Positions 1,552-64,000 of a stretch of 64,000 nt of DNA are shown in pieces (position 1 is the first letter of the stretch; each line of letters starts with the position of its first letter). Location: positions 124,001 to 188,000 of IMG/VR virus record IMGVR_UViG_3300031521_001337; one strand, 5' to 3'. Under the pieces are notes generated by a model. The model was given only the letters and a program-made list of their open reading frames with translations, was not told the DNA's origin and ran no database searches. The position numbers were made by a program, and so were the translations under genes.

Positions 1552-1553
1552 TA

Positions 1554-5707: not shown

Positions 5708-6415
5708 ATGCCTAATGAATTAAACCAATTTGCAACATTCAAACCTATAGAAATAGCTAATGACTCTCGAGCACAAGAAGCTAGACAATATTATCAAGAT
5801 AATGGACTTGTTCCAGACAATCCTTTTATGACTAAATTTTTAGATCAAGCTACTACTACACAATCAATTCCTAATATCTCTACACCTAGTAAAGATACCG
5901 ATATAGCTGCGTTATTAGTTAATAAATTAACTAAAGTTCCAATGTCTACTCCTGAAAAAGCATTAAATGATATTAATGTTAATGCTTCTGTTTTTACACC
6001 AAAAGTATCTGTTTCTCAAAAAGCTAAAGAAGCAATTAAATTCTTTATGGGTAAAGGTTATACTAAAGAAGTAGCTTCTGGTATTACTGGTAATCTATAT
6101 GCAGAATCAGGTTTAAATCATATGCGACCTCAAAATAATGGCGGTCCAGGATTTGGTTTAGCTCAATGAGAAGGACCAAGACAAGCGGATTTTAAACGCA
6201 TTATGGGTAAAGATGTACATTCATCTACAGCACAAGATCAATTAGAGTTTATTAATTGAGAATTAAATAATACACAAAAGCATGCAAAAGCAGCTATATT
6301 ACAAGCTAAATCTCCAGCAGAAGCAGCTTATGCATTTGCTAATAAATATGAACGTATGAAGAAATATAATAAAGAACGTGAATCTTACGCTAATACTTTT
6401 TACACAACTAAATAA
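5708..6415 (+). CDS. Phage tail-lysozyme-like peptidoglycan hydrolase (235 aa with TGA=Trp)
   Basis: ASGITGNLYAESGL...GFGLAQ[TGA]EGPR...QLEFIN[TGA]EL...AAYAFANKYER; the first TGA is the W of the family GLAQW motif. Ends TAA at 6413-6415. Confidence 0.85.
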
Positions 6416-6421
6416 AACAAG

Positions 6422-6459
6422 AAAATCCCCTAGCCTTAACGGTTAGGGGATTTTTTTTT
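6422..6459. terminator. Bidirectional terminator between convergent genes
   Basis: AAAATCCCCTAGCC-TTAAC-GGTTAGGGGATTTT with A- and T-runs on either side. Confidence 0.88.
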
Positions 6460-9400
6460 ACTTTCTATCAACAGTTGGTAAGATTTCCATCATATTTCAA
6501 TTACCTCTTAAAAACGTAACTAAATCAGATTTACCTGCAAGTACACTCTTAAAATCGGTCATAGTATTAGTCATAATTGAAGCAAAAGCTGGTTCTCAAC
6601 TTAATGCTCCAAATACACCACCAAATGGATCAAACTCCCCAAAACTCTTCATACCTACTTTAGTAGCTAGTTGTTCGTATTGAGACATTTCTTTCATTGG
6701 TTTCATACCATCTTCTCCTTTAGACATTAATATATGTCCTAATCAAATCATCATCATAGCGATTAATAAATCATGTAACGCAACTTTAGCATTAGCTAAT
6801 CTTTGAGGATCAGTATTCTTTAAATCACCAGTAGCAAGAGCTCTAATAGTTAAACCTAATGAATACATTAAACCTTCACTAGGAGAACCAATTCAAGCAT
6901 TAGCAGGAATAATAGGATCTTTAGAACCTAATTGATCTTTAGTTACTTCTTGCATTTCATAATTACCTTGTTCATCAATTACAGGTTTACCATTTTCATC
7001 AGTAGTCATTTTTTGATAATATAGAATTTTATTTCCATTATCATCAATTGTAAACTTTTGACCCATATAACCTCTAGGAGATTTTTGATCAGGTTTACCA
7101 AAATAATATTTAACTTTAGATGGTCAGAATGTTAAGAATTGTCCAAAAATAATACCCATTGCAGTATGTTTAATCAAAGGTGACATATCTTGATCATAAA
7201 ATCCATAAGCCATATCAGAAAAATTCTTAATACTACCACGTTCTTTAGATGTGTATGCTGATGGAATATTATCTTTTTCAGTTAAAAGTTTTTCACCAAA
7301 CGAAGAATTCTCACCATTAAACTCGTCAATTATAGTTAAATACAAACTACGTTGTTTATTGTATAATTCATCAGATGCATTATATTGATATCCATTAGCT
7401 TCGCGATTTTTAAAATAATGAGCATATCTTTTATCTTTAGAAGGATCATATTGTAGTTGTCCTTCTGAATTTAAACTATGTGCATCATAACAACCATCAT
7501 GAATCATTTTTGCAAATAATAAGGATAGTCGATTTACATAATCTGGTGCAGTATTGAATCAATACATATTTTCACCCAAGAAGTTAAATCCGAATTTATC
7601 AACTTTCTTTCTATCAACAATGTGATTTAAATCTTGATTAGCAAAACGCATTTCTAAGTTGATAGCTTCATTTAAGGCATATGTTTCTTTATTAGGATCT
7701 AATACTAATTTATAAGCTTTTGCAAGATGATCTCCATTAAAACTATCATCTCCATAAATTTTACTTCATGCATAAGATGTATTCTTAACTGTTCCAACAA
7801 GTAACTCTTTAATTAATAATGCAGGTCTTAATGAAATTGCCATTAAACTCGATATTTTTTGTACCTTTTTAATAACAGCTAATGCTTCTGCACCTTCTTT
7901 ATCAGCTACTAACGATTGACCATATACAGCAGTTTTCATTTGATTAAAGAAATCTTCAAGAGCTTCTGTAAGTTCTTTAGTCTTTCCTGAACTTCATCCG
8001 TGAAACTTCATTACTGTTAATGCAGAATGTATATTAGGAAGTACTGTATTAAAGTGTTTTTCTCTAATATTTTCAAAAGCATATTTTAAACCAATAACAT
8101 CTAAGTTTACTTCAAAAGCATTTACTCCATATTTTTCAATTAAACTTAATCTATAATTGTCATTAGTATTTTTAAATTGATTATACATACGTTTAAATCC
8201 ATTAACTGATTCATAAGATTCAACACGTTGTTCTTCTGTAATATCTCTAGGATCTAATAAACCTTTAGTATCATCTCAGAATTTACCAACAGTTTTTCTA
8301 AAACCATCTGTAGTAATTGATTTTCATTTACTTAAACTCATTTTCTTAACAAGTGGAGCTTTAAATAAATCAGATCCAATAGATGTTCATTCACTAAAGT
8401 TTTCGTGCTTTTTAAATTCTTCTAATGTTTCAATATTGTATTTATTTATAGGACTATATTTAAACATATTGAATACTACTGTTTCTAAATAAGCTCTTTG
8501 AGGATTATCAAGATTAGATTTAAGATCTCATGGATTTTTAAATCTAAAATCATTATCAATAACACCATTATGTTGTTCAAAGAAAACTTTGTGATATTGA
8601 TCAGCATCTCCAATAATTATTTTTTGAAGAGTAGAACGACCTATTGCTTCATAGTATTTATTAGTTGCACTTACAATTGAAGCAGATTCTTTATTAAATT
8701 CAGAAGCAATTTTGTTATGTGCAATGGTAATCATACCGTGTAAACGAGTCATAGCTTGTGATTGTAGAGCATCGGCAGTATTGAAATGTTGACCTTGAAA
8801 TAAACCTACAATCTTATTACCATTCTTATCATATTCTGGAGATGTTCCCATAACCATAGTTCTAATTCAATCAGTAGCATCACCAATTCTAATTCCATAT
8901 CTAGGAGTTGCATAATCAAATGTATCATTTAAATTAGTGTAATATGATACACCTAATGATACAAGATAGTATATATAATTCAAAGGGTCTGAGAAATCTT
9001 GAATTTCAGTTTGGTCTTTATTTTGAAGACTGTTTCCATATTTATCAAGAAGTTCATTTCTAAACTTTAAAAACCATTGTAATTTATCATTAGCTGTAGA
9101 CATTTCTTCATCATCTTGACGATATGAAGCAATTGTTGTTTTTAACGCAGAATTATCAATATTACCAGCTTTAGATAAAATTTCACCTCATATGGTTTTC
9201 ATCATATCAGATGCTTTTAAATTTCCTGTTTTAAAATTGTTTTTAAAATCAGATTTAACTTTTACAATTTCATCACCTAATAAATTAAAATTATGAATAG
9301 CTTTATCAATTGGAATAAAATCCGCTTTATCACTGAATCAGTTATATACAGATACATTATTAATTGTTGAACCTTTTAAGTTATCAGTTAAAGCATTTAA

Positions 9401-11128
9401 TACTGTCAAAGCTTTCATTATTTCAATATTAGCTGTACTTGCTGTAAGTATTCTACTATCATTAGCTAATGATTTATTAGGTTTAAATTTACCTAAAATA
9501 GTATTACCTCTAGTAAATTCATTAACTTGATCTAAAGCATTAATAGTAATTGCAATAGCTTCTACACTTCGAGTATTAATGTTTCTAAATAATAATACAC
9601 CAGCATGAGATAATTCAGGAATTGAATTTTCATCATTTACTATTTCCCATTCAGGTGTTAAATATTTATTAAGTACTCTTTGCATTTGAATTGGAGCTTC
9701 CTTACCATTAATAAGAATTCCATGTTCTTTATTTTTAGCAGCTTTAAATGACTTAACAAGGTCATTCATTTTACTATCTTTAGCATTAGTCCATTTTGTT
9801 ACATAATCTTCAACTTTAGCTTGAAATCTTTCTTCCCAACCTAGTTTAGTTTTATCTTCTTCAATCCTTTCAGTATTTAAATTATTTACAATATAAATCT
9901 TAGCTTGACCTTCTGAACGAGCAATAGCCTCTTTAACTAAATTTTCAACAGATTTACCTTTTGTTTTAGTTTTATAATCATAAGCAGGAAATGCAATCTT
10001 ACAAGTATCAACAATTTCAGAATCTAAATCAGTAGTAGATAAATGATCCCTTTTGATTTTAGAAGGAATAAGAGTTCTTAAATCATTACTCATATTACCT
10101 GAATTATATTCTAATCCTGATGATGAATTTGATCTGTCTGAAATTTCTTCTAATGTAATAGCGTTAGGATTTATTTCAATATTATTACCTTTTTTAGGAA
10201 CAATTAATTGTAGTATATTTAAAGAAGATTGAGCTGTATCAACATAACTATCTAACAACTGACGTTTTATTCCTAAAATATAATCAGTTTCTAATTTCTT
10301 AGATGAATCCCAATCAGAATATTTATTTCTTGAAACTTTAATTTCATATAAATTAGGAATTCCTTTATCATCAATTTCTAATACATGAATATTTCCATTC
10401 ATATGATTAGCAGTACTGTTTACAGATTGACCTATTTTAATAATACTATTAGACGATTGCATTTTTCTACCTCAAACAATTAAATCATTTTTAAGTGTAG
10501 CAATCGCTATTTTGTAATTGTCTAAATTAAATTCTTTTTTCTCAAAGTTAGACGTTCCATCTAATTTATCAAATTCTTTAGATGCAAATTGATTATAATT
10601 ATGAATCTCTTTCATAAGATTCTCTAAATACATATCAATATCTTTATCCTTATATAATTTACCAGCATCAGATAAAGCCAATCTTACAAGATTAGAACCA
10701 ATTTTACTCATTTCCATCATTCTATTATCAAGAGATAAATTTAAATTAACTCTTGCCATTAGAACAGCAGCAGATTCATTAGGATATTTAACTTTTAATA
10801 AAGCTAATTGATTCTTTTTAAAATTTGCTTCAATAAATTCGGGGGAGAGTAATTTCTCTTCCCCGTTTATATTATGTGTAAGTTTTATAAAACTATAAGG
10901 TGTTAATCCATCAGATACTTTAGGATCGATATTTGATTTTGCTGTATTATCTTCTAACACATTTAAAGTTAAGTCTTGTAAAGATTGGGTTAGTGTATCT
11001 TCAGATCTACTGTGTTTTACACCCACTTCTTTATCCAGATTGTTCTTAACAAAATCTGTTAGTTCTTTATCCGAATTAAAAGTTGCATTAAATCCGTCTA
11101 TATTTAAATAGTATTTACATTTATCCAT
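6458..11128 (-). CDS. Giant virion-associated protein D (1556 aa with TGA=Trp), possible degenerate PD-(D/E)xK domain near the N-terminus
   Basis: Track fragments 10472, 9338, 8867, 8528, 7994 and 7124 are in one frame, joined by TGA only. Starts MDKC, ends TAA at 6458. Confidence 0.85.
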
Positions 11129-11139
11129 TTTATTTTATT

Positions 11140-14100
11140 TTAATAACTGCAATCTTGTATCAGTTGATCATTTTTTATTAATTGTTTTATCTTTCCTGAT
11201 ACATTAAACATTTCAAATGCGTTTGTAGTATCAATTAATCCATCTTCTGCACCTATTAATTTAGAACCAAACTGAGTCATTATACTATCAATTGGTTGAC
11301 CTAATAAATCTATTGAATCTTCTCATTTTAAATCAGCATCTAAATTTAATAAATCAGATATTGATTTTTTAATAGATTCATTAAATACTTTCTCAGTAAA
11401 TAATTCATCAGGTTTAATATTGCTTTTAACTGTCATTGTTAATAATTTAACAAAAGTTTCCTCTAATTTATCAGCATTTATATCTCCATTATAACTCTTA
11501 GATATTTCTGAAAACATAGGATGATATTGTACTGAATTCACAATTCTATAATAAGAATCAGAATCATTACTTTTCATTGTAGCTAATACTAAATGTAGAA
11601 TCTCGTGTAATGGTTCTTCCATTCCAGCTTTATCAACATTTACATAAACTCCACCTTCATAAACAAATGCCGCAGAATTATTTACATCTAAATGTGTAAA
11701 GTCTTTTAAATCATCATTTGTAATAATATTGATCGGAACTCCGAATTTATTTTGAAGAACATCAATCATAGCGTTAACTATTTCAACTGAATCAGATTTA
11801 CTGTAAGCAGTAACATATGAACTCTTAGAAGGATTACTTTGAGTAACAACATCTTTAACTTTTTCAAAATTATCGGTTGCTCATTTTGGTAAAAACAATT
11901 GTTTTATATTAGTAGCATCTACTCCAATAAAAAATCGTTCTGCTTTAACATGATTTATTTTACTATCGTCTCCAACATTAGGAATATTTGAATAATGATA
12001 TGCAGAAACTAATAGTTTATCTCCAATCATTTTCTCAACAATAAAAGGTTTAGCGTTTCCTTCTACAAGTAAATAAGAACCTGGAACTATATATTGAAAT
12101 ACTTTATCAAAACTTGTATTATCCAATGCAATTTTTACTGTATTAAAATCATCTTTTAATATACCTTTTTGTCCATTAATAGGATTACCTTCATACATAT
12201 AAAGTTTATCGGGAATTGAATTTCATTTATAGCGTTCAGCTAAAGACTCTTTATATTTCTGTGTAATATCTATATCAGATGATTCGTATTTAGATTCAGA
12301 TATAGGTCTACTATAAACATAACCTGTTTTACTTTGATAAACTTTAACTTCTTGACTATTAGTATTAGTTATATTAGGAGTGTTTCCAAGTTTAAATCTG
12401 TTTTTAATTATTCAACCTTGAGCAAAAGATTCATTTTGTGATTTATTACTCAATAATAAATATCTTGATAAATTTAAATCTGATGTAGCTACATCAATAT
12501 AACGATTAACTCCTCCAAACTCAGATGATGTTTTAATATGATCATAAGCTGATTCAAGTACTTTTAATACATTACCAGTTGAAGTATCATATATAAAATC
12601 ATCTTTATTAATTGTAGATTGACTATTAATTTGCTCTATAGAAAATTCTGAATTTTTAAAAGCTCCATGATTATTTTTCTTTGGACTAAGAAATATTTCT
12701 TGCATGTTATCTAATATCTTACCATTTGAATCTGTTTTAAACACATCACTAATTGATTGTTTAACACTAACCTTTTCAGTAGCTGATATAACATGATCAA
12801 TACTTGGAGAAGTTACATATTTAATACTATTTTCCATAACATATTTTACAGTATTGTTCTTAGTTAAATAATATACAATTTTCTTATCTCCTGCATCAGA
12901 TTGACTAGTACCATGAGCTAATACAATAGCATCAACAAGTTTATCATCTTCTTTAACAAGAACGTGTGCACCATTCATTACTCCAAATTGTACAGGTTGT
13001 CAAGCATCATTATTTTCAATTTCTGAAATCGTATGACTTTTAAATGTATTTGTATCAACATCTGTTCCGATTGAAAAGTTTTTAATATCACTTACTGGAA
13101 CTTGTTCTCCATTAACAGTTAACATAGAACCATTTATTTCAGAAATTTCTCTATACGTTTTACTTCTTCCAACTTTTACTTTAACTCTACCAGATTTAAT
13201 TAAATCAAGCATAGTACCTCACTTAACTTTACTAAATTTATTTATAGATAATTCAGATTCAGTTTTACTTGATTTGTATACAGGTTTAATTGTAGTATCA
13301 TCAACTTTTCTAGAATATATATAATCTGATTTAAGTAATGATTTACGTGTTGTTAATCCATCCCCACCTGAAATTGTAGTAATAACTTTATTACCATCAG
13401 TATCTACTTTATAATCAAAAAAGATTTCATAAATAGTTTTATCTCCAAATTTAACTCCAATTAAATCACCTTGTCTAAGATTTTTAATTAGAGTTTTTTC
13501 AGCAGGTTGATAATAATAATCACGATTTTCTTTTAATACTTTAGTTTCAAAGTTAGATTTTATAGTGTAAGCTGAATCTCTTGTATTTATTAAATCTGAT
13601 ACACCGTTAACATCTATAGTATTTTTATAAGATGCTTCATTATAAACAAATAATAATTTACTAAGTAATTTAGATTTATCTCCAAATCCTGGATTAATTA
13701 TATTATTTAATATCTCAGTTCTTTGTGCATCAGTACCAGTTCTAAGAGTTTCAGAGTTTTTAATGTAATTATCATTATCGTATAAATTTAATGCCAACTC
13801 AGTTAAAGCCATTATCTTATTTTGTTCATCATAAGCATAATTTAGATTTAAAAATATATGACCTTTATGAAATTGAGTTTTTACGTTTTCATTTGCAATT
13901 CCAGCAATAACCATTTTAGAGGTCCATGATGGTTTAGGAATATTAAGTCCTTGCATTAATTTAATTACATTCTTATCTTTAATCAACTCCGCAGGGCTGT
14001 AAAGCCCCACGGAATTTTCATTAATGTTTGTAAGTTCAATATTCTCAATTGAATCAAATTGTGGAAGCATTTCCATAATTGATTTAAGTTCATCCAAACT

Positions 14101-14208
14101 TCTACCTGATAATAATTTTTTAATTTCATTAATATCAGTAACAGGTTTTTCAACTGAACCTAAATTATATTTCTTACCTCCAACGTTAAGTATTATTTCA
14201 CAACTCAT
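11140..14208 (-). CDS. Virion-associated protein C with zincin-like metallopeptidase domain (1022 aa with TGA=Trp)
   Basis: Fragments 13219, 13000, 12412, 11881 and 11323 are in frame; PLHEILHLVL (HExxH) plus downstream EE. Starts MSC, ends IQDCSY-TAA. Confidence 0.85.
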
Positions 14209-23162: not shown

Positions 23163-23169
23163 TTTTTAT

Positions 23170-31617: not shown

Positions 31618-31625
31618 ATTATTGT

Positions 31626-39205: not shown

Positions 39206-39225
39206 ATTTTATTTTTTGATATTAT

Positions 39226-39263: not shown

Positions 39264-39288
39264 CTGATTAAATTTTTAATTACAAAGA

Positions 39289-44680: not shown

Positions 44681-44681
44681 T

Positions 44682-45329: not shown

Positions 45330-45350
45330 ATTTTTATATTTTTTTTGTGT

Positions 45351-49785: not shown

Positions 49786-49800
49786 AAGTTAGATTTAATA

Positions 49801-49831
49801 AAAAAGGGTGAGGCAAGACGCCCCACCCTTT
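49801..49831 (-). terminator. Rho-independent terminator
   Basis: Minus strand AAAGGGTGGGGC-GTCTT-GCCTCACCCTTTTT after the 49848 gene. Confidence 0.85.
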
Positions 49832-49847
49832 AAGTAATTAATTAATA

Positions 49848-50930: not shown

Positions 50931-50959
50931 TTTTTATAGTTTATATCATTTAAAAATAT

Positions 50960-52144: not shown

Positions 52145-52168
52145 AATTGTATAGTTTTAATAATTTAA

Positions 52169-53062: not shown

Positions 53063-53085
53063 ATATAATTATATTATGGTTAATA

Positions 53086-54000: not shown

Positions 54001-54050
54001 ATTTTTTTGTATTTTTTAATTTTCATCTACTTGTAAAATATCTAAAATTA

Positions 54051-54071
54051 GGGGAAGGTTAATCCTTCCCC
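54051..54071. terminator. Hairpin after the major capsid gene (terminator or mRNA-stabilising stem)
   Basis: GGGGAAGG-TTAAT-CCTTCCCC, perfect 8-bp stem. Confidence 0.75.
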
Positions 54072-54082
54072 ATTTTTTATTA

Positions 54083-55513
54083 CTAAACTTCTTCAATAAT
54101 GAATGATTTATAAGGAGCGAATGCTGCAATACCAGAGTATCCTGCAACGATCAATTTAGATCCTGCGATTGGAGAACTAACGATACCACTAGTGATACCA
54201 TCTACACCACCAACACCTGGATATTTAGATGTTACAAATTCTGCACCTTCTAATGTAAATGCTGCGATAGCTGGTTGATTTGTTGAAACGTCAGGTGACA
54301 TATCAAGACAAATACCGTATCCTTTTCTATCATATTCTTTAGTAAGAGCACGATCAACCATGAATGTTACCATATTACCGGCAATTTCATAAGAAGTGAA
54401 AGTTCCACCAACTTTGATAGGATTATCAGCTTTAACCATTGATTGAGCTGCTTTAGAATACATCATTGTTGGAGTTGATCCCCACAATTTCAACCAGTCT
54501 CCTAAAGTAGAGTTAATTTGACCCCAAAGTCTATCATTAACAATAAATGTGTAACTGTTACCAATTGCATTTGCTGCTTTTTGATTCATTTGATCAATTA
54601 CTGTATTGATGATGTTTACATTCAATTTAGCATATTTATACTTAGATGCAAATCTTTCGATTTGAGGAATAAGACCATCACCCGCGATAAGTGGACGACC
54701 ATCTTCTGTAAGTACAGTAGATTTACCATTAACATCCATAGTTGTTTTTCCCCATAGTAAGTGGTTATTTTTAACTGTTTGGAAGTTTTCAAACAAATCT
54801 TTTTCCATTTTGTTTAACTTAAAGATCTTTTCTTTCAAGTCTCCAGCTCCATCTCCTGATGCAATTTTGATAAATTGATCTTCCATTTGAGCATAACGAG
54901 AAGAGTAAGAAATGTCATTTCTATGTTCTGTGATCCATTGACGATGTTTTTCAATGTTTGATTGATACTTAGTATAACCTTCTTCATGGTACTCAGGCAT
55001 AATATTAGATAAGAAACGAGTTGTTCCACCTACTTGACATGCTGAAGCATCAAGAATTGAAGAGAAATCTGCATCAATTAATTGAACCGTATATTCCCAG
55101 AATACATCTGCTTTTCTTTGTGGGGTTGCTTTAACAATACATTGCTGACGCGATCCGTCAATTTTGAATGTATCATATTTTTCATAATATCTTTCTTTGA
55201 AATACATTATGATATCTGCACCACCTGCACCAGTACCCGTTGGTGCTGCTGCGAATTCAACTCTTTTTACGAATTCTACATCAATTTCCCATTCTACCAT
55301 TAAGGTATTAAGTGGTTGAAATTTATTAGCTGTTTTAGAGTTGTAATAAATGTTCATTAAGGCTTCTGTTAAGAAAGTCGCTGTATTATGTGTATACATG
55401 CGAGCCATAACTCCCATCATTTTAGGACGAGTTCCTAAAAGTTTGTAGAAATCCTCATAGGTTCTACTGTGTGCCAATTCTGGCTTTACGTTAACGTAAC
55501 TTGCTACTACCAT
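54083..55513 (-). CDS. Major capsid protein, crAss-like
   Basis: 476 aa with crAss MCP-like blocks (VEWEID, PEYHEEGYTKYQSNIEKHR, LLWGK, GDGLIPQI); preceded by an acidic scaffold-like gene and followed by a hairpin; all 7 Trp are TGG. Confidence 0.85.
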   Translation of the reverse strand: MVVASYVNVKPELAHSRTYEDFYKLLGTRPKMMGVMARMYTHNTATFLTEALMNIYYNSKTANKFQPLNTLMVEWEIDVEFVKRVEFAAAPTGTGAGGADIIMYFKERYYEKYDTFKIDGSRQQCIVKATPQRKADVFWEYTVQLIDADFSSILDASACQVGGTTRFLSNIMPEYHEEGYTKYQSNIEKHRQWITEHRNDISYSSRYAQMEDQFIKIASGDGAGDLKEKIFKLNKMEKDLFENFQTVKNNHLLWGKTTMDVNGKSTVLTEDGRPLIAGDGLIPQIERFASKYKYAKLNVNIINTVIDQMNQKAANAIGNSYTFIVNDRLWGQINSTLGDWLKLWGSTPTMMYSKAAQSMVKADNPIKVGGTFTSYEIAGNMVTFMVDRALTKEYDRKGYGICLDMSPDVSTNQPAIAAFTLEGAEFVTSKYPGVGGVDGITSGIVSSPIAGSKLIVAGYSGIAAFAPYKSFIIEEV

Positions 55514-55527
55514 TGTAATCTAATTTT

Positions 55528-56526
55528 TTAAAAATTTAAGTCGTAAATGCTATTTTGTGTTTTGCCGGAAGGATTATTCCTAATAACGGCGGGTTTTGGT
55601 TTTATCTGTGATTTAAGTTTTGCTATCTCCGACTCATATGCATTCTTCAATGCATCGAATGAATCTTTTCCGTAACGTGAAAACCAAGCAAGTTCATATA
55701 ATTTTTTTGGATCATTTAAACTTTTATAAAACTCACTGGTTCCATTTTCGTCTAAATCCAAAATCTGTGAAAGTACTTCATTTTTTTCATCATCATCTAA
55801 CTCTATTCCGTAGAATTCTGGCGTTTGCAATGCCACATTAACCATAGTTTCAGAAAATTGGTTAAATTGTTCTTCTCTTTCGGTTTCAGCTTCTTGCTTT
55901 TGAGCTTCGTTATATTGATCTTCTAGTTGTTTATATTCTGTTCTAAGCACACCTACTTTTTTAGTAAATAATGCCTCATCTTGTAATTCTTTTTCTAATT
56001 CTCTAGCTAATTCTTCTTCGGTTAAATCATACTTTTGTTTTAAGTCTAATAAGAATAATTCTTGATCATCGTAAGAATCAATACTATATTCAGATGCAGC
56101 TCCTTGTGTAAATTCTTTAATTACTGAAGTTTTATATGCTTCAAGGAATTCTTCAACTGTTAAATTTTCACCTCTAATTTGATTAATAAGTTCAATTTCT
56201 TCATCATCTAAATCGTGATCTACAGGTTCTTGTTCTGGATCAGCAGCTTTTAAAATTTCTAATTGTTCTTCTTCTGTCAAATCATAGAAATCAATTTCTT
56301 GTTCATTATCGTTTTCATCCAAAACACTAATTTTAGAATTTTCAATTCCAAGTGTTTTAAGATATTTATTTAAAATAAACTCTTCGGTATCAGGTCCTTC
56401 GCTTTTTTCTGCAAAAAAGTCATCGACATCATCTCCAGGAATATCTAATTGTATTTCGGGTTCGTGTTGGGGGTTATCGGGCAAAAGATCGCCTTCAAAA
56501 AGTTCATCAAATTCATCCATATTCAT
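55528..56526 (-). CDS. Acidic coiled-coil protein upstream of MCP (putative scaffold)
   Basis: Very D/E-rich and helical; immediately precedes the MCP. Confidence 0.7.
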   Translation of the reverse strand: MNMDEFDELFEGDLLPDNPQHEPEIQLDIPGDDVDDFFAEKSEGPDTEEFILNKYLKTLGIENSKISVLDENDNEQEIDFYDLTEEEQLEILKAADPEQEPVDHDLDDEEIELINQIRGENLTVEEFLEAYKTSVIKEFTQGAASEYSIDSYDDQELFLLDLKQKYDLTEEELARELEKELQDEALFTKKVGVLRTEYKQLEDQYNEAQKQEAETEREEQFNQFSETMVNVALQTPEFYGIELDDDEKNEVLSQILDLDENGTSEFYKSLNDPKKLYELAWFSRYGKDSFDALKNAYESEIAKLKSQIKPKPAVIRNNPSGKTQNSIYDLNF

Positions 56527-56609
56527 TTATCATTTATAATGTGTATTATTTTTCTATCTATTAAATATATTCATCTTTCATAATGATTTTTATATATTCA
56601 TTATTTTAT

Positions 56610-56647
56610 ACAAAGTTACCACCTTTATCAACAATAAAATATATAAA
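56610..56647 (-). promoter_or_regulatory. Bacteroidota-type promoter (-7 box TAACTTTG at 56618-56611) for the capsid operon
   Basis: TAnnTTTG plus TTTAT 29 nt upstream, as at the other two sites. Confidence 0.65.
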
Positions 56648-56680
56648 CTATAAACTTTATTGAAAATAATTGTGGTAACT
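56614..56680. repeat. Imperfect 25-bp inverted repeat with 17-bp spacer
   Basis: AGTTACCACCTTTATCAACAATAAA (56614-56638) versus TTTATTGAAAATAATTGTGGTAACT (56656-56680): 20/25 complementary, outer 9 bp perfect. Confidence 0.6.
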
Positions 56681-56691
56681 ATTAAGATGCA

Positions 56692-57207
56692 CTAATTGAA
56701 GAATTTAACTTCGCCAGTATTAAATAACATAGCTTCAGACTGACGTCTAAAACTTAATCCTTTTAGAACTTTACCTCCAGCTTTATTTCACATCATGAAT
56801 GCATGTTCAATATTAGCAGGAGTATCTTTTGCAATAATCCTTTTTAAAAGTGTACTCTTTGCAAGAGATCCAAATCCTACATTATATGAAAATGAAATTA
56901 AAGCTTCATATTGATTCTGAGTTAAATCTAACTTCAATTTATCAATTTGTTTAGCAAATAGTTCCAAATCAACCTTTAACATTTTAGTAGCATCTTCAAT
57001 AGTATTAAGTTTATGATAACTATATGCTTTTTCTTTATTTTCAGCACCTCTAATCATTTTACCATCTCTATCTAATATAACTTTTCCATAACCTTCAGTT
57101 CAGATTCCAATAGGATCCATTTTAGGTTGAAGTCCAATATGAGAGAGATCTCCGTCATGGAGACTCTCATAATGGGATACTAATTTAATCAGTTTGTCTG
57201 TAATCAT
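56692..57207 (-). CDS. Endolysin, GH24 phage lysozyme (171 aa with TGA=Trp)
   Basis: HYESL...MDPIGI[TGA]TEGYG...LTQNQYEALISFSYNVG...FMM[TGA]NKAGGKVLKGL..RRQSEA; both TGA are at conserved W positions. Confidence 0.9.
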
Positions 57208-57208
57208 T

Positions 57209-57493
57209 TTATTTATTTAATTCAGAGAATATTGTATCAACATCTATTACAATTGTACTTCTAATTAATACTTCTGTATTTGAAGTAAAATTAAAATTAA
57301 AATTTATATTATTTTCAATTCCAGGATTATTCGATACATTAAAATTTCCTTTATTAACACCTTCTATATTAGCAGAGCCATTAAAAGATATTATTTTACT
57401 TTCTTTAATTGAATAATTGAAAGTATAATCTACATTTCCAATTGTTACTTTAGCTTCAACACTAGTTGATTCATTTGTTTTTGTAATTTCCAT
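57209..57493 (-). CDS. Hypothetical protein
   Basis: 94-aa ORF between the FISUMP gene and the endolysin; not hydrophobic enough for a holin. Confidence 0.7.
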   Translation of the reverse strand: MEITKTNESTSVEAKVTIGNVDYTFNYSIKESKIISFNGSANIEGVNKGNFNVSNNPGIENNINFNFNFTSNTEVLIRSTIVIDVDTIFSELNK

Positions 57494-57518
57494 AATTTTA
57501 TTTTATTAATTTTTTATT

Positions 57519-58622
57519 TTATAATCCACCTTTAGCATAATGATATGTTCCACTATTTGTAGGAGATACTGAAAGTAATGTTAATCCAGTAAAATAACCT
57601 CCGATTATAGTACTAGTTGATTGAGATTGTCCTGATGATATTGTTAAATTAGCTCCTGATACATTAAATGATCTTCCTGCAGCAGCATCATAATAACTAT
57701 AATTAAATGTTATAGTAACATTTGTATTTACAACAACTGCACTCGGTGATCCTGCATATACTGAATACGCATACATTTTTCAATTTGTACCATCATATAA
57801 ATAATCTACATATATTTCAACATATGTATCATTAATTACATAATTATCTGCATAAGCTCAAGCATCATTATTATTGTAACTACAACAAGCTCCACTAGTT
57901 AAAGTAGATCATGTAGTATTATCAGTTACTATTGAAATATCATTTCCATTTCTATATTTAGTACCTCTTAAATTTGATGCCATTCATACTTGATTACCAA
58001 TTTTTACTGTCTTATAAGTATAACCACTATTATCAGTCATTATACCTGAATTAGTAGAATCATCTTTGATTAATCTAACTGAAGCACCTGTTGCAGATCC
58101 ACCACCTTCTAAACTAACTCATTCAGAATCATAATGCATATCCATCATAGTTGAAGTAGATAAATATAATCCAGTCTGTTTTATATATGCAAAATTTCCA
58201 GTATTATATCTAAATCCTCCGCCGACAGCAGCAAATTGATATATATCTGTAGCATTAGTATTTGGAGTTAACCAATGAGTTGTATTTGCTTCTTTCAATT
58301 TTCCACCACCTGTAGTTGTTCCTCCAATAGTTGAAACTAAAGTTTCTAATTCTGTTAAAGTTGGAACATGTCATCCACTTGGAGATATATTTCTAGAATC
58401 TAATACAGCATATGAATTATATAATCTACCATAACCACCATTAGGTAGTATGTGTTGATAGTTTCTAAAATTATATAAACTGTTTTTACTACCTACGTAG
58501 TTACTATCAAATGCACCAATAGCAGCGGAGAATAACTCAGTTAAACTCCTATTACTACTATCAGCATATATTTCAGTAACTACATCTCTTTGATTAAAAT
58601 GATCATTATCTGGAACTGACAT
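57519..58622 (-). CDS. FISUMP (Fibrobacter succinogenes major paralogous) domain protein, circularly permuted (367 aa with TGA=Trp)
   Basis: YGRLYN...PSG[W]HVPT...GKLKE...SVRLIKD comes before YKTVKIGNQV[W]MASNL...YRNG; six TGA. Confidence 0.8.
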
Positions 58623-61410
58623 ACTTTTCCTCCAATTGTTTTATTCTTGATTCAGCACTAGCAAGTTTTGCTATTATCAAGTCAATGTATTTTACTTTAT
58701 ATTCACCCTCTCTATTTCCAACTACAAATTCACTAAATCCATTAGATAATAAATCTTGAGCAATAGTACCAAATCTTAATTCTTCTAAGTTATTTTTAAA
58801 ATTAAATGAAACTAAATTGAGCCTACTATAGTCTTTAATGATTGGTTGAATATTAGTCTTTAAAGTTCTATCTGACGATAAAATAAAATTACTAGCAGTA
58901 ACATTACCATTGAAATGAGAATTATCACTTCCATCAATATAAAATGGAGTTGTACCATCGGAAGCATTTCTAATTGAAAATCCAGTGTTTGAAATTCCTT
59001 GTATTGAATTTTTAATATAGTATTGCTTAACTCCTGCTTGTGAACCTTGTAATTGTATTCTTGCCTCACCTCCAACATCATTTCTAATTAGCACAGCACT
59101 TTTGTTAATTAGAGCAATATCACCTGTTCCACTTTCAGCACTAATATATACTGCATTGCCAGTAAACTGTAAGTAACCTTGTCTAACTGTATTTGCTGAA
59201 TTATAACCACTCAAATAAGCGGCATCAGCAATCATTTTTATTCCCTCACCTGCATAAGTATTAACAGTTCCAGTTGCCATTAAAGTACCATTCACTGCCA
59301 ACTTATACCCTTGGTCAGAAATATATCCAATCCCAGTATTACCATTAGGGCTAATATAAAACCTCCCAATATCGGGTACTGTATTAGCACTTTGGGTTGA
59401 TTGAGTAGTAATTGCAAAATCTCCATAAGACTGATAATCTGTATGTATGAACCATTTCCTAGAACTACCATTAGATACATTATGGTCAAATGATAACATT
59501 CCTACCCAACCTGAACCGCTAGGCAATGATAATCTTCCGTTAATTCCCATCCCACCATTAAGAACTAATGCTCCTGTTGATGGTGATAGTGATTGAGTTG
59601 TGTTTGGTATACTTACTACTCCATTACTTTCAATAGTCAATAAGGGAGTAGTTGCATAATTAAAAGTAAAGGCTTTGTTTCCCCACTGTCCAACAGAATT
59701 AAAAATCATTGACCCATAATTATCTCCACTACTAATAAAATAGTCAAAAGAAGAACCTGAACCAAATTTTAATTTACCTGAATAATTATTAGATGGTATA
59801 TTAATAGCAAAATAATCACCTCTAGCTGATGCATTTGTCCCATCATCACTTATCAAACTATTTACAAAATTACTCCCATTCCATTTAGGAATGTAGTTTG
59901 TTGATAAACTTGATAAATCTTGTGTAGCAATATTATTTACGCCAATAAAATTTCTAATTTGAGTACTAGTAGCAGGACTCATTCTAGCATTAGGGGCATC
60001 GTATACCATTACATAACTTACCGTAGACGCAAAATCAGCGCCATAGTATTTTAAACCATTTACCATTTCAGCATTCAAATTCCCCACCATAGTAGTAGAA
60101 TTTACAGTTAATGGTGCTGTTCCAGTTGCTACTGTTGATTGTAGTTGAGTTGCATTTACTGTAGAAGTAAAAGTTACTGCTCCTGTTTTACTTAACCTAA
60201 ATCTTTCTGTATAAGTATGTGCAATAGCTTCTGTATTGTATGCTCTAGCATCAGAATAATCAATTACTAAATCAGTACCACTTCCACTGTATTTGTTGGC
60301 AATTCTATAAACTCTTTGGTCAGTTCCACCATCGGCATATAAGTACATAGCACTACCATAATCAGAATCCAATGCTCTTAATTCAACACTATGATATGTT
60401 ACACCAAATTTGCCTTTTCCATACGCTGTAACATCCCCACTAATCCACATATTTGCAGATTGTGCAGAGCTATTTTGGTTTAATATGTGGTCGTTATTGT
60501 TGGTATAAGCCGATGAACCTAGACCTAACCAAGATTGTATTTGATTTTGTGTAAAATTATAAACATATCCGTTAGAGTAACCTCCTAGTAAATTAGTAGG
60601 TACGGATTGATTAGCAGTTCCATTATATACTGTTCCTAGTGTTATACTAGAGCCTAAAGTCCCACTAGAAGATACAAAGTCTCCAGTGTTACTACTGGCT
60701 GCTGAACCGAATGTTCTAGTAGGTAGTGGAGTATAACCTAAAGCAGTAGTAACCATTCCTGAGTTGATACCAGTTATCCATCCACCGTAGTTACCAAGAT
60801 TATTATTAAATTGACTGAGATTAGTAGGTCTTGCTGCTGTCAATGCATAAGGTGCTAAACTACTTGCAGTTATAAAACCATTTGGATTAGTTGAATTATA
60901 AGGTACATATCCCAAAGCATTAGTAACAAGTGTTGAACTAATTTGTGTTAATGCTCCATTCTCAACACCAATCAATCTATTATTCATTTGATTGATTGTG
61001 TAGGCATTGAATGTATCAGTTAATGTTGCATTACTGAAAGAACCACCTAAATTAGCATAACCGAATACTGTTTGTATTAGTCCACCAGATCCAGAACCAC
61101 CAGAAGTAACACCAAATGCACAAACTTCACCTTTAACAGATAAATTACCATTACTATCTAAAGTCATTAAATCAGTGAATGTTCCATCTGTATTAACAGT
61201 TGAAAAATTTCAACCATTATCGGTTAACAAATAATTAGAAAGTGGTAATTTTATCACACCATTAGCACCAGCCAAATTAGTTGACTGTGCTACTAATGAT
61301 AAATAATTAAGTGGTACATAAGCACTACCAGAACCACCAGAACTATAATTATTAATAGCAGTAGTTGTTGAACCTCTTTGTAAGGCTATATTTTTACTTT
61401 GAAATTCCAT
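58606..61410 (-). CDS. Tail fibre/spike with C-terminal peptidase S74 intramolecular chaperone (934 aa with TGA=Trp)
   Basis: 61210 fragment joins in frame through one TGA; VT.ALGY.P repeats, GTAPLTVNST, SSDRTLKTNI...GTIAQD...VKY and a terminal coiled coil. Confidence 0.85.
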
Positions 61411-61437
61411 TTTATTATTGTTTTACTGTTGTTTCTG

Positions 61438-63552
61438 TTATTTCTTTGATACTATATTCAATAGATTAGTATCATTTTTTATATCTATACTCATACCATC
61501 AACAATAAATTTTTCAGTTGGAAAAATACTATTTATTGTTAGTAATGAATACGGTTTAAATATATTAGCCAGCGTTATATTTAGTTTTTTGGCTGGTGTT
61601 GAATACTGATTCACATAAGACTGGATAATGTTGTATTCTTGTTTCTGGTCAATTCCTAAAGCCTTTGTTTTGATACTTTGATTGTATGTATAATCTGTAC
61701 CTATTTTTTGAATAACAGATGAATAATTCAATCCTTTATTTGTATCACTACATACTTTTAAATTCATATCAGAAAATTCATTTACAAACGCTGTATTGAT
61801 TACGTTTTTATATTCTGTATCTGTTTCCGCTTTTTTCTCACTTGTAGGTTTAACTAACTTGATGTCAAAATCTTTCAATCATACAGCACCACAAGTACCA
61901 CCCTTATATATTTCAGATGGTTCATATAATGAAAACTCAATATCACCGAATAACATATCTGCCTTTTTAATGGTTATTTTATTACCAACTTCATTTATAA
62001 ATGCTGTTGTATCAACTTCGTTTAATATGTTTTTCCAGTTGTTATAAAGATGTCCATCTTTGTATTCAAACTTAATTGGGAAAGTCATTTCAATATTAGT
62101 TCAATACTTTTGATAACCGTTCCAGTATTTATTTCCGATCTTTAATTTTGCATATAATAATACGTAAGTTGATAAATAATAATCACCTGTAGATGCTTTT
62201 TTACTTTCATCTATATAAGCTACATTAACCGCTGAATCCCAATAAGCAGAGCCACTAATTATTAAATAGTAATCATCATAAAAATAACTACCCTCATTGC
62301 TTGATGAATATTTCAGTACAACATTATTTGTACAGTCAAGCCAAGTTTGTAAAGGTAATGCGCCAGTTGGTGCAACATATCCAGACCTATAAAGACAAAC
62401 ATAATCAGAGAAACTAACAGAAGAACTTAATGCTACATTATTTTCATAGTTTGCCATTCTTACAAAGGATGCACCCTCTTTAGTTGATATTGTATCATAA
62501 TCAAGTTCGGTTAATTCAGACCAAGTACCACCAGTTTTATTATATGTTTTGTATTTATCATTTTTGAAATATTTAAACACATAGTTCTTACTTCCATAAG
62601 TTTTAGGAATAGAAGAAAACCAGTTTGTTGTTCCTGTTACTTTTGTAATGTTGGTTAGATCATCATCAGAAAAAAACTCTGGTATCAAACTATCATTTGT
62701 GCTTACACTGGTTTTAATGCTTACTTGATTATAAACCTCAGCTAATTCAATACTAGCACCATTCGATTTAAAACTTTCATTTGTAACATCTACTGTATTA
62801 CTTAATGTTGTGTAGCCAGTTGAATAATTCAACCAATTGTTTGCAGTAGTATAGGTATGATAGTTTACAAATCCACCTTTTATATAATCATAGTTCAATA
62901 TATAAACCTCATCACCATCTGCTACAATTGTATAGTTTAGGAATTGAAGAAGCTGTGTTAGTACTTCTTTGTATGTTATTGCTTCGTTATCATCAAAGAA
63001 ATTTTGCTCAGCTACGAGTAATTTATCTATGATTTTTTGATCTTCAAAGCCCGGTAAATAGTTGTTTTCATTCACGTATATTTTAGAATAGCAATTACAC
63101 TTTTTGATGATATGAATCAATAAATCTTCAAAGCTTTTTATCTTTCTGTTTACCAGATCAACCGTTTCAAATTTGTAATTGTCTAATGTACTCAAACCAT
63201 CTATTGCTTCAAGTTCAATACTTTCATAATGTTGTTCAAAGCCTTGTGTATATATGTTTGGTGTCAAGTAACCAACTCATTTAATCAGATTATTATCAAC
63301 ATCTTTCAAAGTCATTTTAGTACCTTGTGCAGTTGCTGAATAAAGGTTGAAATTGTAACTATCAGATATAATTGTACAAGTTGCATTTGATAATTTCAAC
63401 GGTTCGTAAATTGTACTATTTGTATTTAATTCGATTTTAAATGGTTCATCTGAGAAAATAATCTCAGATGTTCCACTATTACCATCATTCACATTTATAT
63501 CCACTTGATATAAAGTGTTACTTATATTTTTAAATTGTCCTGTGTAAATCAT
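61438..63552 (-). CDS. Siphovirus-like tail-tip protein (704 aa with TGA=Trp)
   Basis: Fragments 63277, 62101, 61879 and 61438 are in frame; MIYTGQFKN...EPF...[W]VGYLTPNIYTQ...ELEAIDGLSTL resembles the gene that follows the tape measure in Bacteroides siphophages and prophages. Confidence 0.7.
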
Positions 63553-63553
63553 A

Positions 63554-64000
63554 TTACTTTGCTTTGCTTTTTATATTATCATAGTTAGTTAGAACGCCTT
63601 TTAAATTCTTTCCCTCAATAATAAATTTTACTTCACTATTATTTGTTGTAGTTCAATTTATACCACCTTGACCATTTAAAAGAGCAAATAGTGTACTTTG
63701 TTGACCTTGATTTAATATCATTTCACCAGCATTTACTCTAGCTAGTATTTTATCACCAGAAATAGAACCACCTTGTACAATACCACCGTTTGCAAACTTT
63801 GGAATACTTGAAGCTAATATAGCACCTTGCATTACTCCAATTTGAGCCAATGCTAAACCTTCACCTACAAAGGGAATAAAAGCATAAGCTGCTGCTGTTT
63901 CTGCTGCCATAAGTCCAGTATAAGAAGCTGTTTCTGCAACATTGGTTGCAATTTTAGCTGCTGCTGTTCCCGCTTCAATTCCTGCTTGTGTTTGTTTTGC
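63554..64000 (-). CDS. C-terminus of a tape-measure-like protein (starts beyond the window)
   Basis: Ala-rich helix, IPFVG, IPKFANGGIV...GDKILARVNAGEMILNQGQQ..LF, then [TGA]...EVKFIIEGKNLKGVL.NY-TAA. Confidence 0.75.

What the first reader, a model, noticed from the sequence alone, without database searches (positions are those of the whole stretch)
5708..64000. Two genetic codes in one genome: TGA=Trp confined to late genes
Seen: nearly every break between track fragments is an in-frame TGA, and true ends are TAA or TAG. TGA falls on diagnostic Trp sites: GLAQ[W], GI[W]T, [W]NKAGG, G[W]HVP, QV[W]MA. In the 1-5573 block all of about 28 Trp codons are TGG with no internal TGA. Established: TGA-to-Trp and TAG-to-Gln recoding enriched in late genes is known in crAss-like and other gut phages. 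Inference: a code switch times structural and lysis gene expression. The switch machinery (tRNA-Trp with TCA anticodon, release-factor manipulation) is not in this window.
Basis: partly seen in the sequence, partly recalled or inferred. Interest (0 to 1): 0.7.

Follow-up and report, generated by a model that had tools for sequence, protein, structure and literature searches.

The report
Late-gene TGA=Trp recoding, crAss-like phage
A large crAss-like phage from peat reads TGA as tryptophan in its virion, tail and lysis genes but keeps the standard code in its replication genes, using its own UCA suppressor tRNA; this is a known phage strategy, and the 213-kb record is in fact a mis-joined mix of this phage, a second small recoded phage and a piece of host DNA.

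Summary
Reading TGA through fuses the fragments on the minus strand of the window into tidy genes that end in TAA or TAG. Coding density of the late region rises from 0.77 to 0.96, while the early block hardly changes.

TGA means Trp:
- TGA and TGG swap freely between relatives.
- TGA sites match W in standard-code homologues: phi29 gp13 lysozyme, Paludibacter chromosomal Fib_succ proteins and Bacteroidales prophage TerL.
- Gly and Cys are excluded.

A tRNA(UCA) with A1-U72 and G73 lies outside the window, at record c30014-30087. It sits among TGA-free early-type genes, and two relatives of 172-178 kb have one at the same syntenic position. I found no release factor or TrpRS.

Replication genes use TGG only and still use TGA as a stop. 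The capsid gene also avoids TGA, and two homing-endonuclease genes in the early block do carry it.

This matches the pattern already published for crAss-like phages, especially the Zeta group, and for other recoded phages.

New here: the record is composite. It joins about 1.6 kb of Paludibacter-like host DNA, a 28.7-kb TGA-recoded temperate siphovirus with no suppressor tRNA, and the 176.6-kb crAss-like phage. The join runs through an exact 1,945-bp tail-fibre repeat. Window 60826-64000 belongs to the small phage.

The parts
1..5573 (+). End of the early (replication and nucleotide-metabolism) block, in standard code. It holds DNA ligase (ends at 629), thioredoxin, metallophosphatase (2210-2926, which stops at TGA in an ATGA overlap), a ThyX-like gene (3994-5127) and a dGTP-diphosphohydrolase-like gene. 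Trp is always TGG.
5596..5637 (+). Strong intrinsic-terminator hairpin (19-bp stem, T run) exactly at the boundary between the standard-code block and the first recoded gene.
   Evidence: 2 terminator-like sites found, 0.8 expected from shuffles
5708..6415 (+). Phage_lysozyme2 lysin, 235 aa. Both of its Trp positions are TGA (codons 154 and 184) and it has no TGG. It is its own transcription unit between two terminators.
   Evidence: PF18013, 110 bits.; both TGA sites align with W of phi29 gp13 (PDB 3CSR), and the first also with W of Gp16 (9M7N).
6419..6457 (+). Second strong hairpin terminator (17-bp stem), between the convergent lysin gene and the late minus-strand block.
6458..37387 (-). 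Six very large late ORFs with 50 in-frame TGA in all: 1556, 1022, 2984, 2815 (with an SF1 helicase domain), 617 and 1302 aa. They are conserved at 25-40% identity in relatives G001 and G002. Their function is unknown; they sit where crAss-like phages keep their giant transcription or virion proteins.
   Evidence: no PDB or PHROG hit
37458..58622 (-). Late structural cluster of the crAss-like phage. It holds a DUF192 protein, a muzzle-like protein (40421-44680, 11 TGA), GIY-YIG and NUMOD1 homing endonucleases, an Ig-domain structural protein and Fib_succ_major fibre proteins (57519-58622, 6 TGA).
   Evidence: three TGA sites of 57519-58622 align with W in Paludibacter chromosomal homologues.
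54083..55513 (-). crAss-type major capsid protein, 476 aa, with 7 TGG and no TGA. The neighbouring head genes (49848-56526) are also almost free of TGA.
   Evidence: PF23898, 48 bits against a cut-off of 27
58881..60825 (.). Exact 1,945-bp direct repeat, identical to record 6236-8180. It lies in frame inside two tail-fibre genes and is the point where the assembler joined the two phages.
   Evidence: depth of the repeat is about the sum of the depths of the two phages.
60826..64000 (-). Part of a separate 28.7-kb temperate siphovirus, also TGA-recoded. It holds the N-terminus of a 934-aa fibre, a 704-aa distal-tail protein (61438-63552, 3 TGA) and the end of a 1070-aa tape-measure protein.

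Best explanation
Most of the window (1-58880) comes from a crAss-like phage of about 176.6 kb that infects a standard-code Bacteroidales host, probably Paludibacter-like.

Its replication and nucleotide-metabolism genes are written in the standard code. Trp is TGG there, and TGA still serves as a stop in about 12 of 162 genes. Its virion, tail and lysis genes use TGA for 63-85% of their Trp codons and stop only at TAA or TAG.

The phage carries one tRNA with anticodon UCA. It is an ordinary elongator tRNA with the bacterial tRNA-Trp marks A1-U72 and G73. It lies among TGA-free early-type genes, at a position conserved in relatives.

Inferred mechanism. Early genes are translated by the unmodified host apparatus. 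The suppressor tRNA then accumulates, is charged by the host TrpRS and outcompetes RF2 at UGA. Only then can full-length late proteins and the lysin be made. The in-frame TGAs therefore act as a translational lock on late and lytic functions.

Shown here: the recoding, its meaning (Trp), its distribution over genes, the tRNA, and the integrity of the early/late junction.

Inferred: charging by TrpRS, competition with RF2, and the timing function.
For: Meaning of TGA:
- TerL of the small phage: all 5 TGA columns are W in 110-120 of 120 homologues.
- Standard-code Bacteroidales prophages have TGG at those sites.
- The 96 TGA sites of the big phage inside the window, compared with relatives: 48 sites are well aligned, giving 257 aligned codons. 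Of these, 155 are TGA, 66 TGG, 15 Leu, 6 Tyr, 1 Gly and 0 Cys. In the other direction, 21 of 31 aligned TGG sites are TGA in some relative.
- Both lysin TGA sites align with W in phi29 gp13.
- Three Fib_succ TGA sites align with W in Paludibacter chromosomal genes.

Distribution: (Fisher p = 7e-48). G001 and G002 show the same pattern.

The tRNA(UCA): Aragorn; Rfam RF00005 at 62.9 bits, not the tRNA-Sec model; G73 in all three phages, and the G001 suppressor is closest to that phage's own tRNA-Trp. Its place is syntenic in the relatives.

Genome integrity: single contigs from three runs bridge window 3000-8900. Many independent ENA, JGI and Logan contigs hold the same junction. The early block holds only replication and metabolism genes, and the late block holds TerL, portal and MCP.

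Host code: four Bacteroidales genomes that carry related prophages each have two PCRF release factors. Host genes beside the Paludibacter prophage have no in-frame TGA.

Terminators bracket the lysin gene exactly at the code boundary.
Against: - There is no protein-level evidence that W is inserted, and none on how efficiently.
- No phage RF1, anti-RF2 factor or TrpRS was found, so how RF2 is outcompeted is unknown.
- The tRNA's marks (A1-U72, G73) are shared with the phage tRNA-Asp, so they do not prove Trp identity on their own.
- The most abundant late protein (MCP) has no TGA, so recoding is not uniform across late genes.
- Two homing-endonuclease genes in the early block carry TGA.
- The host of the big phage is inferred only from the shared tail-fibre segment and from crAss-like kinship.
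Confidence: 0.88

Rival explanations
1. The 'two codes' are an assembly artefact: a standard-code phage and a recoded phage were joined in one contig.
For: The record is demonstrably composite elsewhere. It holds a host hisB flank at 1-1348, a 1,945-bp repeat that joins two phages, and two full sets of TerL, portal and MCP.
Against: The early/late boundary is not at that join:
- It is bridged without a difference by contigs of 29, 43 and 78 kb from three runs.
- It is held by about 24 independent contigs.
- G001 and G002 have the same two-part layout plus a tRNA(UCA).
- The two halves are complementary in gene content. Replication genes are found only in the TGA-free genes, and structural genes only in the recoded part.
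Confidence: 0.03
2. TGA is read as something other than Trp: Gly as in code 25, Cys, or selenocysteine.
For: Aragorn labels the tRNA 'SeC' because of its anticodon. TGA=Gly hosts do exist in nature.
Against: - Of 257 aligned codons, 1 is Gly and none is Cys. TGA and TGG interchange in both directions.
- Standard-code homologues have W at the TGA sites.
- The tRNA is 74 nt, fits the general tRNA model and has no long Sec-type arm.
- About 135 TGA sites in the big phage's late genes is far too many for SECIS-directed insertion.
Confidence: 0.01
3. The host itself uses code 4 (Mycoplasma-like), and the phage simply follows it.
For: The G+C content is low (about 29%), which is typical of code-4 lineages.
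Against: - About 95 kb of early genes use no TGA for Trp (327 TGG) and end at TGA in about 12 cases, several of them ATGA overlaps.
- Portal, MCP and muzzle are crAss-type, and such phages infect Bacteroidota.
- The small phage that shares the tail-fibre segment is integrated beside hisB of a Paludibacter-like genome. That genome has RF1 and RF2 and no in-frame TGA in its genes.
Confidence: 0.03
4. TGA is only partly suppressed. Late genes are then made at reduced, tunable yield rather than under a clean reassignment, and the lock never fully opens.
For: - No RF2 antagonist was found.
- The capsid and head genes, which are needed in the greatest amounts, avoid TGA.
- The small recoded phage and the Paludibacter prophage have no suppressor tRNA at all. 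This suggests that some read-through may come from the host or another source.
Against: Giant ORFs with 12-16 TGA each could not be completed unless suppression per site were very efficient. No late gene uses TGA as its stop.
Confidence: 0.1

Closest known systems
Zeta-group crAss-like phages with opal reassignment (Yutin et al. 2021, PMC7886860; phage Lera, PMC12386605)
   Same: - Genome of 145-192 kb (here about 176.6 kb).
- About 25 tRNA genes, including tRNA-Sup(UCA). Relative G001, like Lera, also has a tRNA(CUA).
- TGA=Trp mostly in structural, muzzle, TerL and lysin genes, with replication genes in standard code.
- Mobile endonuclease genes.
- Replication block with DnaG-type primase, DnaB and SNF2-type helicases, an AAA+ ATPase, ThyX and RNR.
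   Different: - It comes from peat metagenomes, not the human gut.
- Portal and MCP are only distantly related to named Crassvirales (20-27% portal identity).
- Placement in the Zeta group by TerL phylogeny was not tested.
- No RNAP signature could be shown in the giant ORFs.
TGA-recoded Jade, Agate and Sapphire phages and the 'code switch controls lysis' model (Borges et al., bioRxiv 10.1101/2021.08.26.457843)
   Same: - Standard-code host.
- Replication genes in standard code.
- Recoded structural and lysis genes.
- The suppressor tRNA gene itself lies among standard-code genes.
- The lysin is fully recoded.
   Different: There is no RF1 or TrpRS 'code change module' as in Jade. The tRNA is not next to the lysis gene.
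Recoded prophages Garnet and Topaz (TAG) in standard-code hosts (Borges et al.)
   Same: This comparison concerns the small 28.7-kb phage in window 60826-64000:
- It is temperate.
- Its integrase is free of recoded stops, while most other genes carry them.
- It, or a close relative, is integrated in a standard-code Bacteroidales chromosome.
   Different: It uses TGA=Trp rather than TAG=Gln. It has a large serine recombinase. No suppressor tRNA is detectable, although a relative in Bacteroides neonati has one upstream of TerS and TerL.
NCBI table 4 organisms (Mycoplasma, Spiroplasma)
   Same: TGA is read as Trp by a tRNA with a UCA anticodon.
   Different: Here the reassignment covers only part of one genome. 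It is imposed by a virus on a host that keeps RF2.

Membership tests
Stop-codon-recoded phage (TGA=Trp in late genes, standard code in early genes) | Conserved late genes are interrupted only by TGA and are restored under table 4 | tested here: met
Stop-codon-recoded phage (TGA=Trp in late genes, standard code in early genes) | TGA positions correspond to Trp in homologues | tested here: met
Stop-codon-recoded phage (TGA=Trp in late genes, standard code in early genes) | Phage-encoded suppressor tRNA with anticodon UCA | tested here: met
   It lies at record c30014-30087, outside the window.
Stop-codon-recoded phage (TGA=Trp in late genes, standard code in early genes) | Replication genes are free of in-frame TGA, and TGA is still used as a stop there | tested here: met
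   The exceptions are two homing-endonuclease genes.
Stop-codon-recoded phage (TGA=Trp in late genes, standard code in early genes) | The host uses the standard code | tested here: inconclusive
   The host of the big phage is not identified directly. Bacteroidales genomes with related small prophages have two release factors and no in-frame TGA.
Stop-codon-recoded phage (TGA=Trp in late genes, standard code in early genes) | Trp is actually inserted at UGA in phage proteins | not testable with these tools
   This needs proteomics.
crAss-like phages (Crassvirales in the broad sense) | crAss-type major capsid protein | tested here: met
   PF23898, 48 bits against a cut-off of 27
crAss-like phages (Crassvirales in the broad sense) | crAss-type portal | tested here: met
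   PDB 7QOG gp20, E = 2.6e-17. The tblastn hits are almost all portals of crAss-like, Flavobacterium and Cellulophaga phages.
crAss-like phages (Crassvirales in the broad sense) | Muzzle protein | tested here: met
   PF25731, 71 bits
crAss-like phages (Crassvirales in the broad sense) | TerL falls inside the crAss-like clade | not tested
   A TerL was found (phrog_6681, E = 1.8e-70), but no tree was built.
crAss-like phages (Crassvirales in the broad sense) | Giant RNAP with a DxDxD motif in the transcription block | tested here: inconclusive
   ORFs of 2984 and 2815 aa lie in the expected place, but they have no Pfam, PHROG or PDB match to an RNAP.
crAss-like phages (Crassvirales in the broad sense) | Replication block with DnaG primase, DnaB and SNF2 helicases and an AAA+ ATPase | tested here: met
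Zeta group of crAss-like phages | Genome of 145-192 kb with many tRNAs and mobile endonucleases or introns | tested here: met
   176,645 bp once the small phage is removed. There are 25 tRNA genes and a tmRNA gene, and GIY-YIG, NUMOD and HNH genes. Introns were not examined.
Zeta group of crAss-like phages | Phylogenetic placement with Zeta genomes | not tested
   No Zeta reference proteins were available as tool output.
Code 25 (TGA=Gly) or selenocysteine decoding | TGA columns match Gly, or Cys/Sec with a Sec-type tRNA | tested here: not met
   Gly in 1 and Cys in 0 of 257 aligned codons. The tRNA fits RF00005 with an ordinary arm structure.

The most novel reading that the evidence does not exclude
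The small phage (28.7 kb) is a TGA-recoded temperate siphovirus with no suppressor tRNA of its own. It co-occurs with the crAss-like phage in the same peat samples, shares an identical 1,945-bp tail-fibre segment with it, and lies as a prophage in a Paludibacter-like host.

It may rely on, or profit from, the crAss-like phage's tRNA(UCA) to translate its own late genes. On this reading a shared private genetic code would link two unrelated phages of one host.

Alternatively, the two phages may really form cointegrates through the repeat.
Probability: 0.08. Interest if true: 0.7.

Novelty: new member of a known kind. Interest (0 to 1): 0.3.

Why it matters
It adds a clean, well-controlled example of block-wise TGA=Trp recoding from a non-gut habitat (peat). 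The suppressor tRNA, the code boundary at a terminator and the host lineage are all pinned down.

It also shows that a '100% complete' 213-kb virus record is a chimera of two recoded phages plus host DNA. That matters for anyone using such records for genome-size, gene-content or code statistics.

The recoded prophage without a suppressor tRNA, sitting in a standard-code Paludibacter, sharpens an open question: how do such phages get their TGAs read?

Tried and rejected
- Release factor and TrpRS. Searches of the whole record for release-factor domains (PF00472, PF03462) and for TrpRS/TyrRS (PF00579) found nothing.
- Giant ORFs. The four largest (2984, 2815, 1556 and 1022 aa) had no PHROGs match, and apart from helicase/AAA domains in the 2815-aa one no Pfam match. 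The 2984-aa ORF and the muzzle-like ORF had no PDB sequence match, so an RNAP assignment could not be made.
- Lysin homologues. The close homologues from the protein database looked like independent proof of W. The two I checked at DNA level turned out to be called with TGA=W themselves. I dropped that evidence as circular and used phi29 gp13 instead.
- Promoters. Sigma-70 promoter scans were no better than shuffles and were not used.
- Early-block TGAs. Almost all of the 33 apparent in-frame TGAs were read-through of true stops or upstream extensions. The one in 112774-113223 lies in the overlap with the primase gene and was rejected. Only two, both in endonuclease genes, look real.
- Sequencing runs. 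Co-occurrence of the two phages could not separate 'two replicons' from 'cointegrate', because they share 17 of 24 listed runs and the lists are capped. Depth alone also cannot separate them, since both models predict that the repeat's depth equals the sum.
- Depth hole. The zero depth over window 56000-58880 in Logan contigs is unexplained, and I did not interpret it.
- Exact look-up. The ThyX-like protein was not found on record by exact look-up.
Full report
**1. What the record is**

The window is bases 124001-188000 of a 213,486-bp IMG/VR virus record. I laid out the whole record and analysed it. It is A+T-rich (about 29% G+C) and has three parts.

- A plus-strand block at 34.7-129.4 kb holds replication and nucleotide-metabolism genes. 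These include a DNA polymerase (phrog_1252), DnaB helicase, Toprim primase, SF2 helicase, ATP-dependent ligase, a ThyX-like gene, AAA+ ATPases, exonuclease, NAMPT and GSP synthase. It also holds a tRNA array and a tmRNA gene.
- A short minus-strand stretch at 22-34.2 kb holds early-type genes: a replication initiator, ribonucleotide reductase, a PD-(D/E)XK nuclease and Cpn60.
- The rest is mostly minus-strand and holds virion, tail and lysis genes.

**2. The observation**

- Under table 11 the minus strand of the window is a string of fragments. Under table 4 they fuse into close-packed ORFs of up to 2984 aa.
- Over the whole record, late-region coding density goes from 0.768 to 0.955 and median ORF length from 116 to 203 aa. 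The early block goes only from 0.876 to 0.899.
- Every late ORF under table 4 ends in TAA (87) or TAG (9).
- Early ORFs inside the window use TGG only. Their single TGA is the real stop of 2210-2926, in an ATGA overlap.
- Of 162 plus-strand early ORFs, 123 end in TAA, 25 in TAG and 14 in TGA. About 12 of the TGA cases are plainly true stops, being ATGA overlaps, TGA-TAA tandems or cases with 0-11 codons to the next stop.
- TGA therefore has two meanings along one molecule.

**3. What TGA encodes**

Codon-level comparison is the strongest test, because it does not depend on how database proteins were called.

- I compared the 96 TGA codons of big-phage ORFs in the window with two complete relatives (G001, 178 kb; G002, 172 kb) and about 20 further IMG/VR loci. 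Well-aligned relatives cover 48 sites.
- The 257 aligned codons are TGA 155, TGG 66, Leu 15, Tyr 6, Ser 5, Gly 1 and Cys 0.
- In the other direction, 21 of 31 aligned TGG sites are TGA in some relative.

Standard-code homologues agree:

- Both TGA sites of the lysin (GFGLAQ-x, FIN-x-ELNN) align with W of phi29 gp13, PDB 3CSR.
- Three TGA sites of the Fib_succ_major protein (G-x-HVP, QV-x-MA, TT-x-S) align with W in chromosomal, stop-free Paludibacter genes.
- In the small phage's TerL all five TGA columns are W in 110-120 of 120 homologues. Standard-code Bacteroidales prophages have TGG there.

One piece of evidence had to be dropped. The close lysin homologues in the protein database were, where I checked the DNA (two of them), called with TGA=W, so their W's are circular.

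Gly, Cys and Sec are excluded.

**4. The machinery**

- Aragorn finds one tRNA with anticodon UCA at record c30014-30087, outside the window.
- It is 74 nt with normal arms. It scores 62.9 bits on the general tRNA model, not the Sec model.
- It has A1-U72 and discriminator G73. Of the 25 phage tRNAs, only tRNA-Trp(CCA) and tRNA-Asp share both marks. From my own knowledge, G73 and the last two anticodon bases are the main bacterial TrpRS identity elements.
- G001 and G002 each carry a tRNA(UCA) at the syntenic place. The G001 suppressor is most similar to that phage's own tRNA-Trp.
- The gene lies among TGA-free early-type genes, so it can be expressed before any TGA has to be read.
- No release factor or TrpRS is encoded.

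**5. Where the code boundary lies**

- The last early ORF ends at 5573.
- A 19-bp-stem terminator sits at 5596-5637.
- The lysin gene (5708-6415, with both of its Trp codons TGA) follows.
- A second terminator (6419-6457) separates the lysin gene from the convergent late block.

The recoding follows function, not strand:

- The lysin is on the plus strand and is recoded.
- RNR, the replication initiator and the nuclease are on the minus strand and are not.
- The crAss-type capsid gene (7 TGG, 0 TGA) and the neighbouring head genes avoid TGA. This would fit selection against dependence on the suppressor in the most highly expressed proteins, but that is an inference.
- Two homing-endonuclease genes inside the early block do carry one TGA each, and these align to W, F or TGA in relatives.

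**6. Is it one genome?**

For the early/late junction, yes.

- Window 3000-8900 is covered without a single difference by contigs of 29, 43 and 78 kb from three separately assembled peat-metagenome runs.
- About 24 independent ENA, JGI and Logan contigs hold the same junction.
- G001 and G002 have the same layout.

For the whole record, no.

- Relatives lack everything between record 180.7 kb and 13.5 kb going through the contig ends.
- That region holds a second complete head-tail module: TerS, TerL, Phage_portal (330 bits), S78 protease, HK97 capsid and tape measure. It also holds a large serine recombinase.
- The big phage has its own TerL (phrog_6681), a crAss-type portal (PDB 7QOG gp20) and an MCP.
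- An exact 1,945-bp direct repeat lies in frame in two tail-fibre genes, at record 6236-8180 and at 182881-184825 (window 58881-60825).
- One IMG/VR contig (L017) passes through the repeat the other way and skips the small phage. Three others end inside the repeat.
- An ENA contig of 26,998 bp is the small phage on its own, at 99.9% identity over the 21.6 kb read.
- The protein index lists a 174,982-bp contig with the big phage's lysin. The predicted sizes are 176,645 and 28,661 bp.
- Depths differ between the two parts: 11.4 against 27 in run X1, and 19.3 against 24.5 in run X10. The repeat's depth is about the sum. That sum fits two replicons as well as a cointegrate with extra free small phage, so depth alone does not decide.
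- Record 1-1348 is a hisB gene, 96.9% identical to a Paludibacter MAG exactly where that MAG carries a related prophage. The record's ends repeat 6.6 kb of the small phage at 99.92% identity.

The simplest reading is that the assembler walked from host DNA into the small prophage, through the repeat into the whole crAss-like phage, through the repeat again into the rest of the small phage, and across attP back into the small phage. Hence window 60826-64000 is from the small phage.

**7. The small phage**

- It is also TGA-recoded (44 TGA against 32 TGG). Its recombinase and a few neighbouring genes are TGA-free.
- Its relatives are prophages in Bacteroides, Parabacteroides, Paludibacter, Tannerella and Muribaculaceae. 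Some are recoded and some are not.
- The four host genomes tested each have two release factors.
- The Paludibacter prophage lies at G006:C3, about 386.5-422.2 kb. Its G+C is 0.26-0.34, against 0.39-0.45 in the flanks. It has TGA in its late genes, while the flanking host genes have none.
- No tRNA is detectable in the small phage or in that prophage region. A relative in Bacteroides neonati has a 94-nt tRNA(UCA) just upstream of the terminase genes.
- How the copies without a suppressor tRNA get TGA read is open.

**8. Comparison with what is known**

- Block-wise TGA=Trp or TAG=Gln reassignment in late genes, with phage suppressor tRNAs, is described for crAss-like phages, especially the 145-192-kb Zeta group (PMC7886860).
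- Zeta phage Lera has 26 tRNA genes, tRNA-Sup(UCA) and 41 TGA-containing ORFs, mostly structural and lysis genes (PMC12386605).
- For other clades the 'recoding regulates late and lytic genes' model and recoded prophages are described (bioRxiv 10.1101/2021.08.26.457843).
- The present phage fits this kind in every tested respect. Family placement by phylogeny, and an RNAP assignment for the giant ORFs, were not achieved.

**9. Verdict**

The phenomenon is already known, so this is a new member from a new habitat. The useful extras are the exact anatomy (the tRNA's position, the terminators at the code boundary, TGA stops in early genes, a capsid gene that avoids TGA), the demonstration that the record is a chimera, and the recoded prophage without a suppressor tRNA.

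Noticed in passing
record 1-1591 (outside the window; L003:1-1591): The start of the 'virus' record is bacterial. It holds a bifunctional hisB gene (IGPD + HAD, 201 bits) at 41-49% G+C, 96.9% identical to a Paludibacter MAG at the edge of that MAG's prophage. This is a host-prophage junction inside the record.
   Followed up: yes
window 58881-60825, identical to record 6236-8180: An exact 1,945-bp direct repeat lies in frame in two tail-fibre genes (934 aa and 1579 aa, each with its own S74 chaperone domain after the repeat). It is shared by the crAss-like phage and the small siphovirus, which points to recent exchange and a common host.
   Followed up: yes
record 184826-206897 plus 1592-8180 (window 60826-64000 is part of it): A 28.7-kb temperate siphovirus that is TGA-recoded. 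Its serine recombinase (record 203813-205534) has no TGA, and it has no detectable suppressor tRNA. It also carries a 150-aa tRNA_SAD (AlaX-like editing domain) gene at record 205659-206111.
   Followed up: partly
G006:C3 about 386,500-422,200 (L089-L091): A TGA-recoded prophage of about 36 kb lies in a Paludibacter MAG. Its own genes, and its two release factors, are standard code. There is no tRNA in the 60 kb examined.
   Followed up: partly
L072:9493-9586 (Bacteroides neonati locus): A related prophage carries a 94-nt tRNA(UCA) with a long extra arm, A1-U72 and G73, just upstream of its terminase genes. The G001 suppressor (96 nt) and the big phage's tRNA-Trp(CCA) (82 nt) also have long extra arms, which is unusual for Trp-type tRNAs.
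   Followed up: no
record 68160-68566 (L006:14160-14568): The phage encodes a tmRNA (Rfam RF00023, 107 bits; tag GNKTISFARTAFMAAA).
   Followed up: no
record 37201-37278, 39692-39760 and 58909-58970: Two RAGATH-1 hammerhead ribozymes and one Pistol ribozyme, all above Rfam gathering scores, lie in the early block.
   Followed up: no
record 82862-83037: Aragorn calls two odd tRNA-like genes with long extra arms next to tRNA-Trp: 'Tyr(ata)' of 90 nt, and one with a two-base anticodon (tc).
   Followed up: no
window 49848-56526: The head-gene cluster, including the crAss-type MCP (7 TGG, 0 TGA), is almost free of TGA although it lies in the middle of the recoded block.
   Followed up: partly
G001 (178-kb relative) 24197-24271 and c161242-161337: This relative has both a tRNA(CUA) and a tRNA(UCA), as reported for Zeta phage Lera.
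   Followed up: no
window 56000-58880: Logan contigs of four runs show almost no depth here, although five IMG/VR contigs hold all or part of the stretch at 100% identity. This is unexplained, and the tool warns that holes prove nothing.
   Followed up: no
record 81839-82618 and 120712-121602: Two homing-endonuclease genes (one HNH-like, one GIY-YIG-like) inside the standard-code early block each carry one in-frame TGA, aligned to W, F or TGA in relatives.
   Followed up: partly
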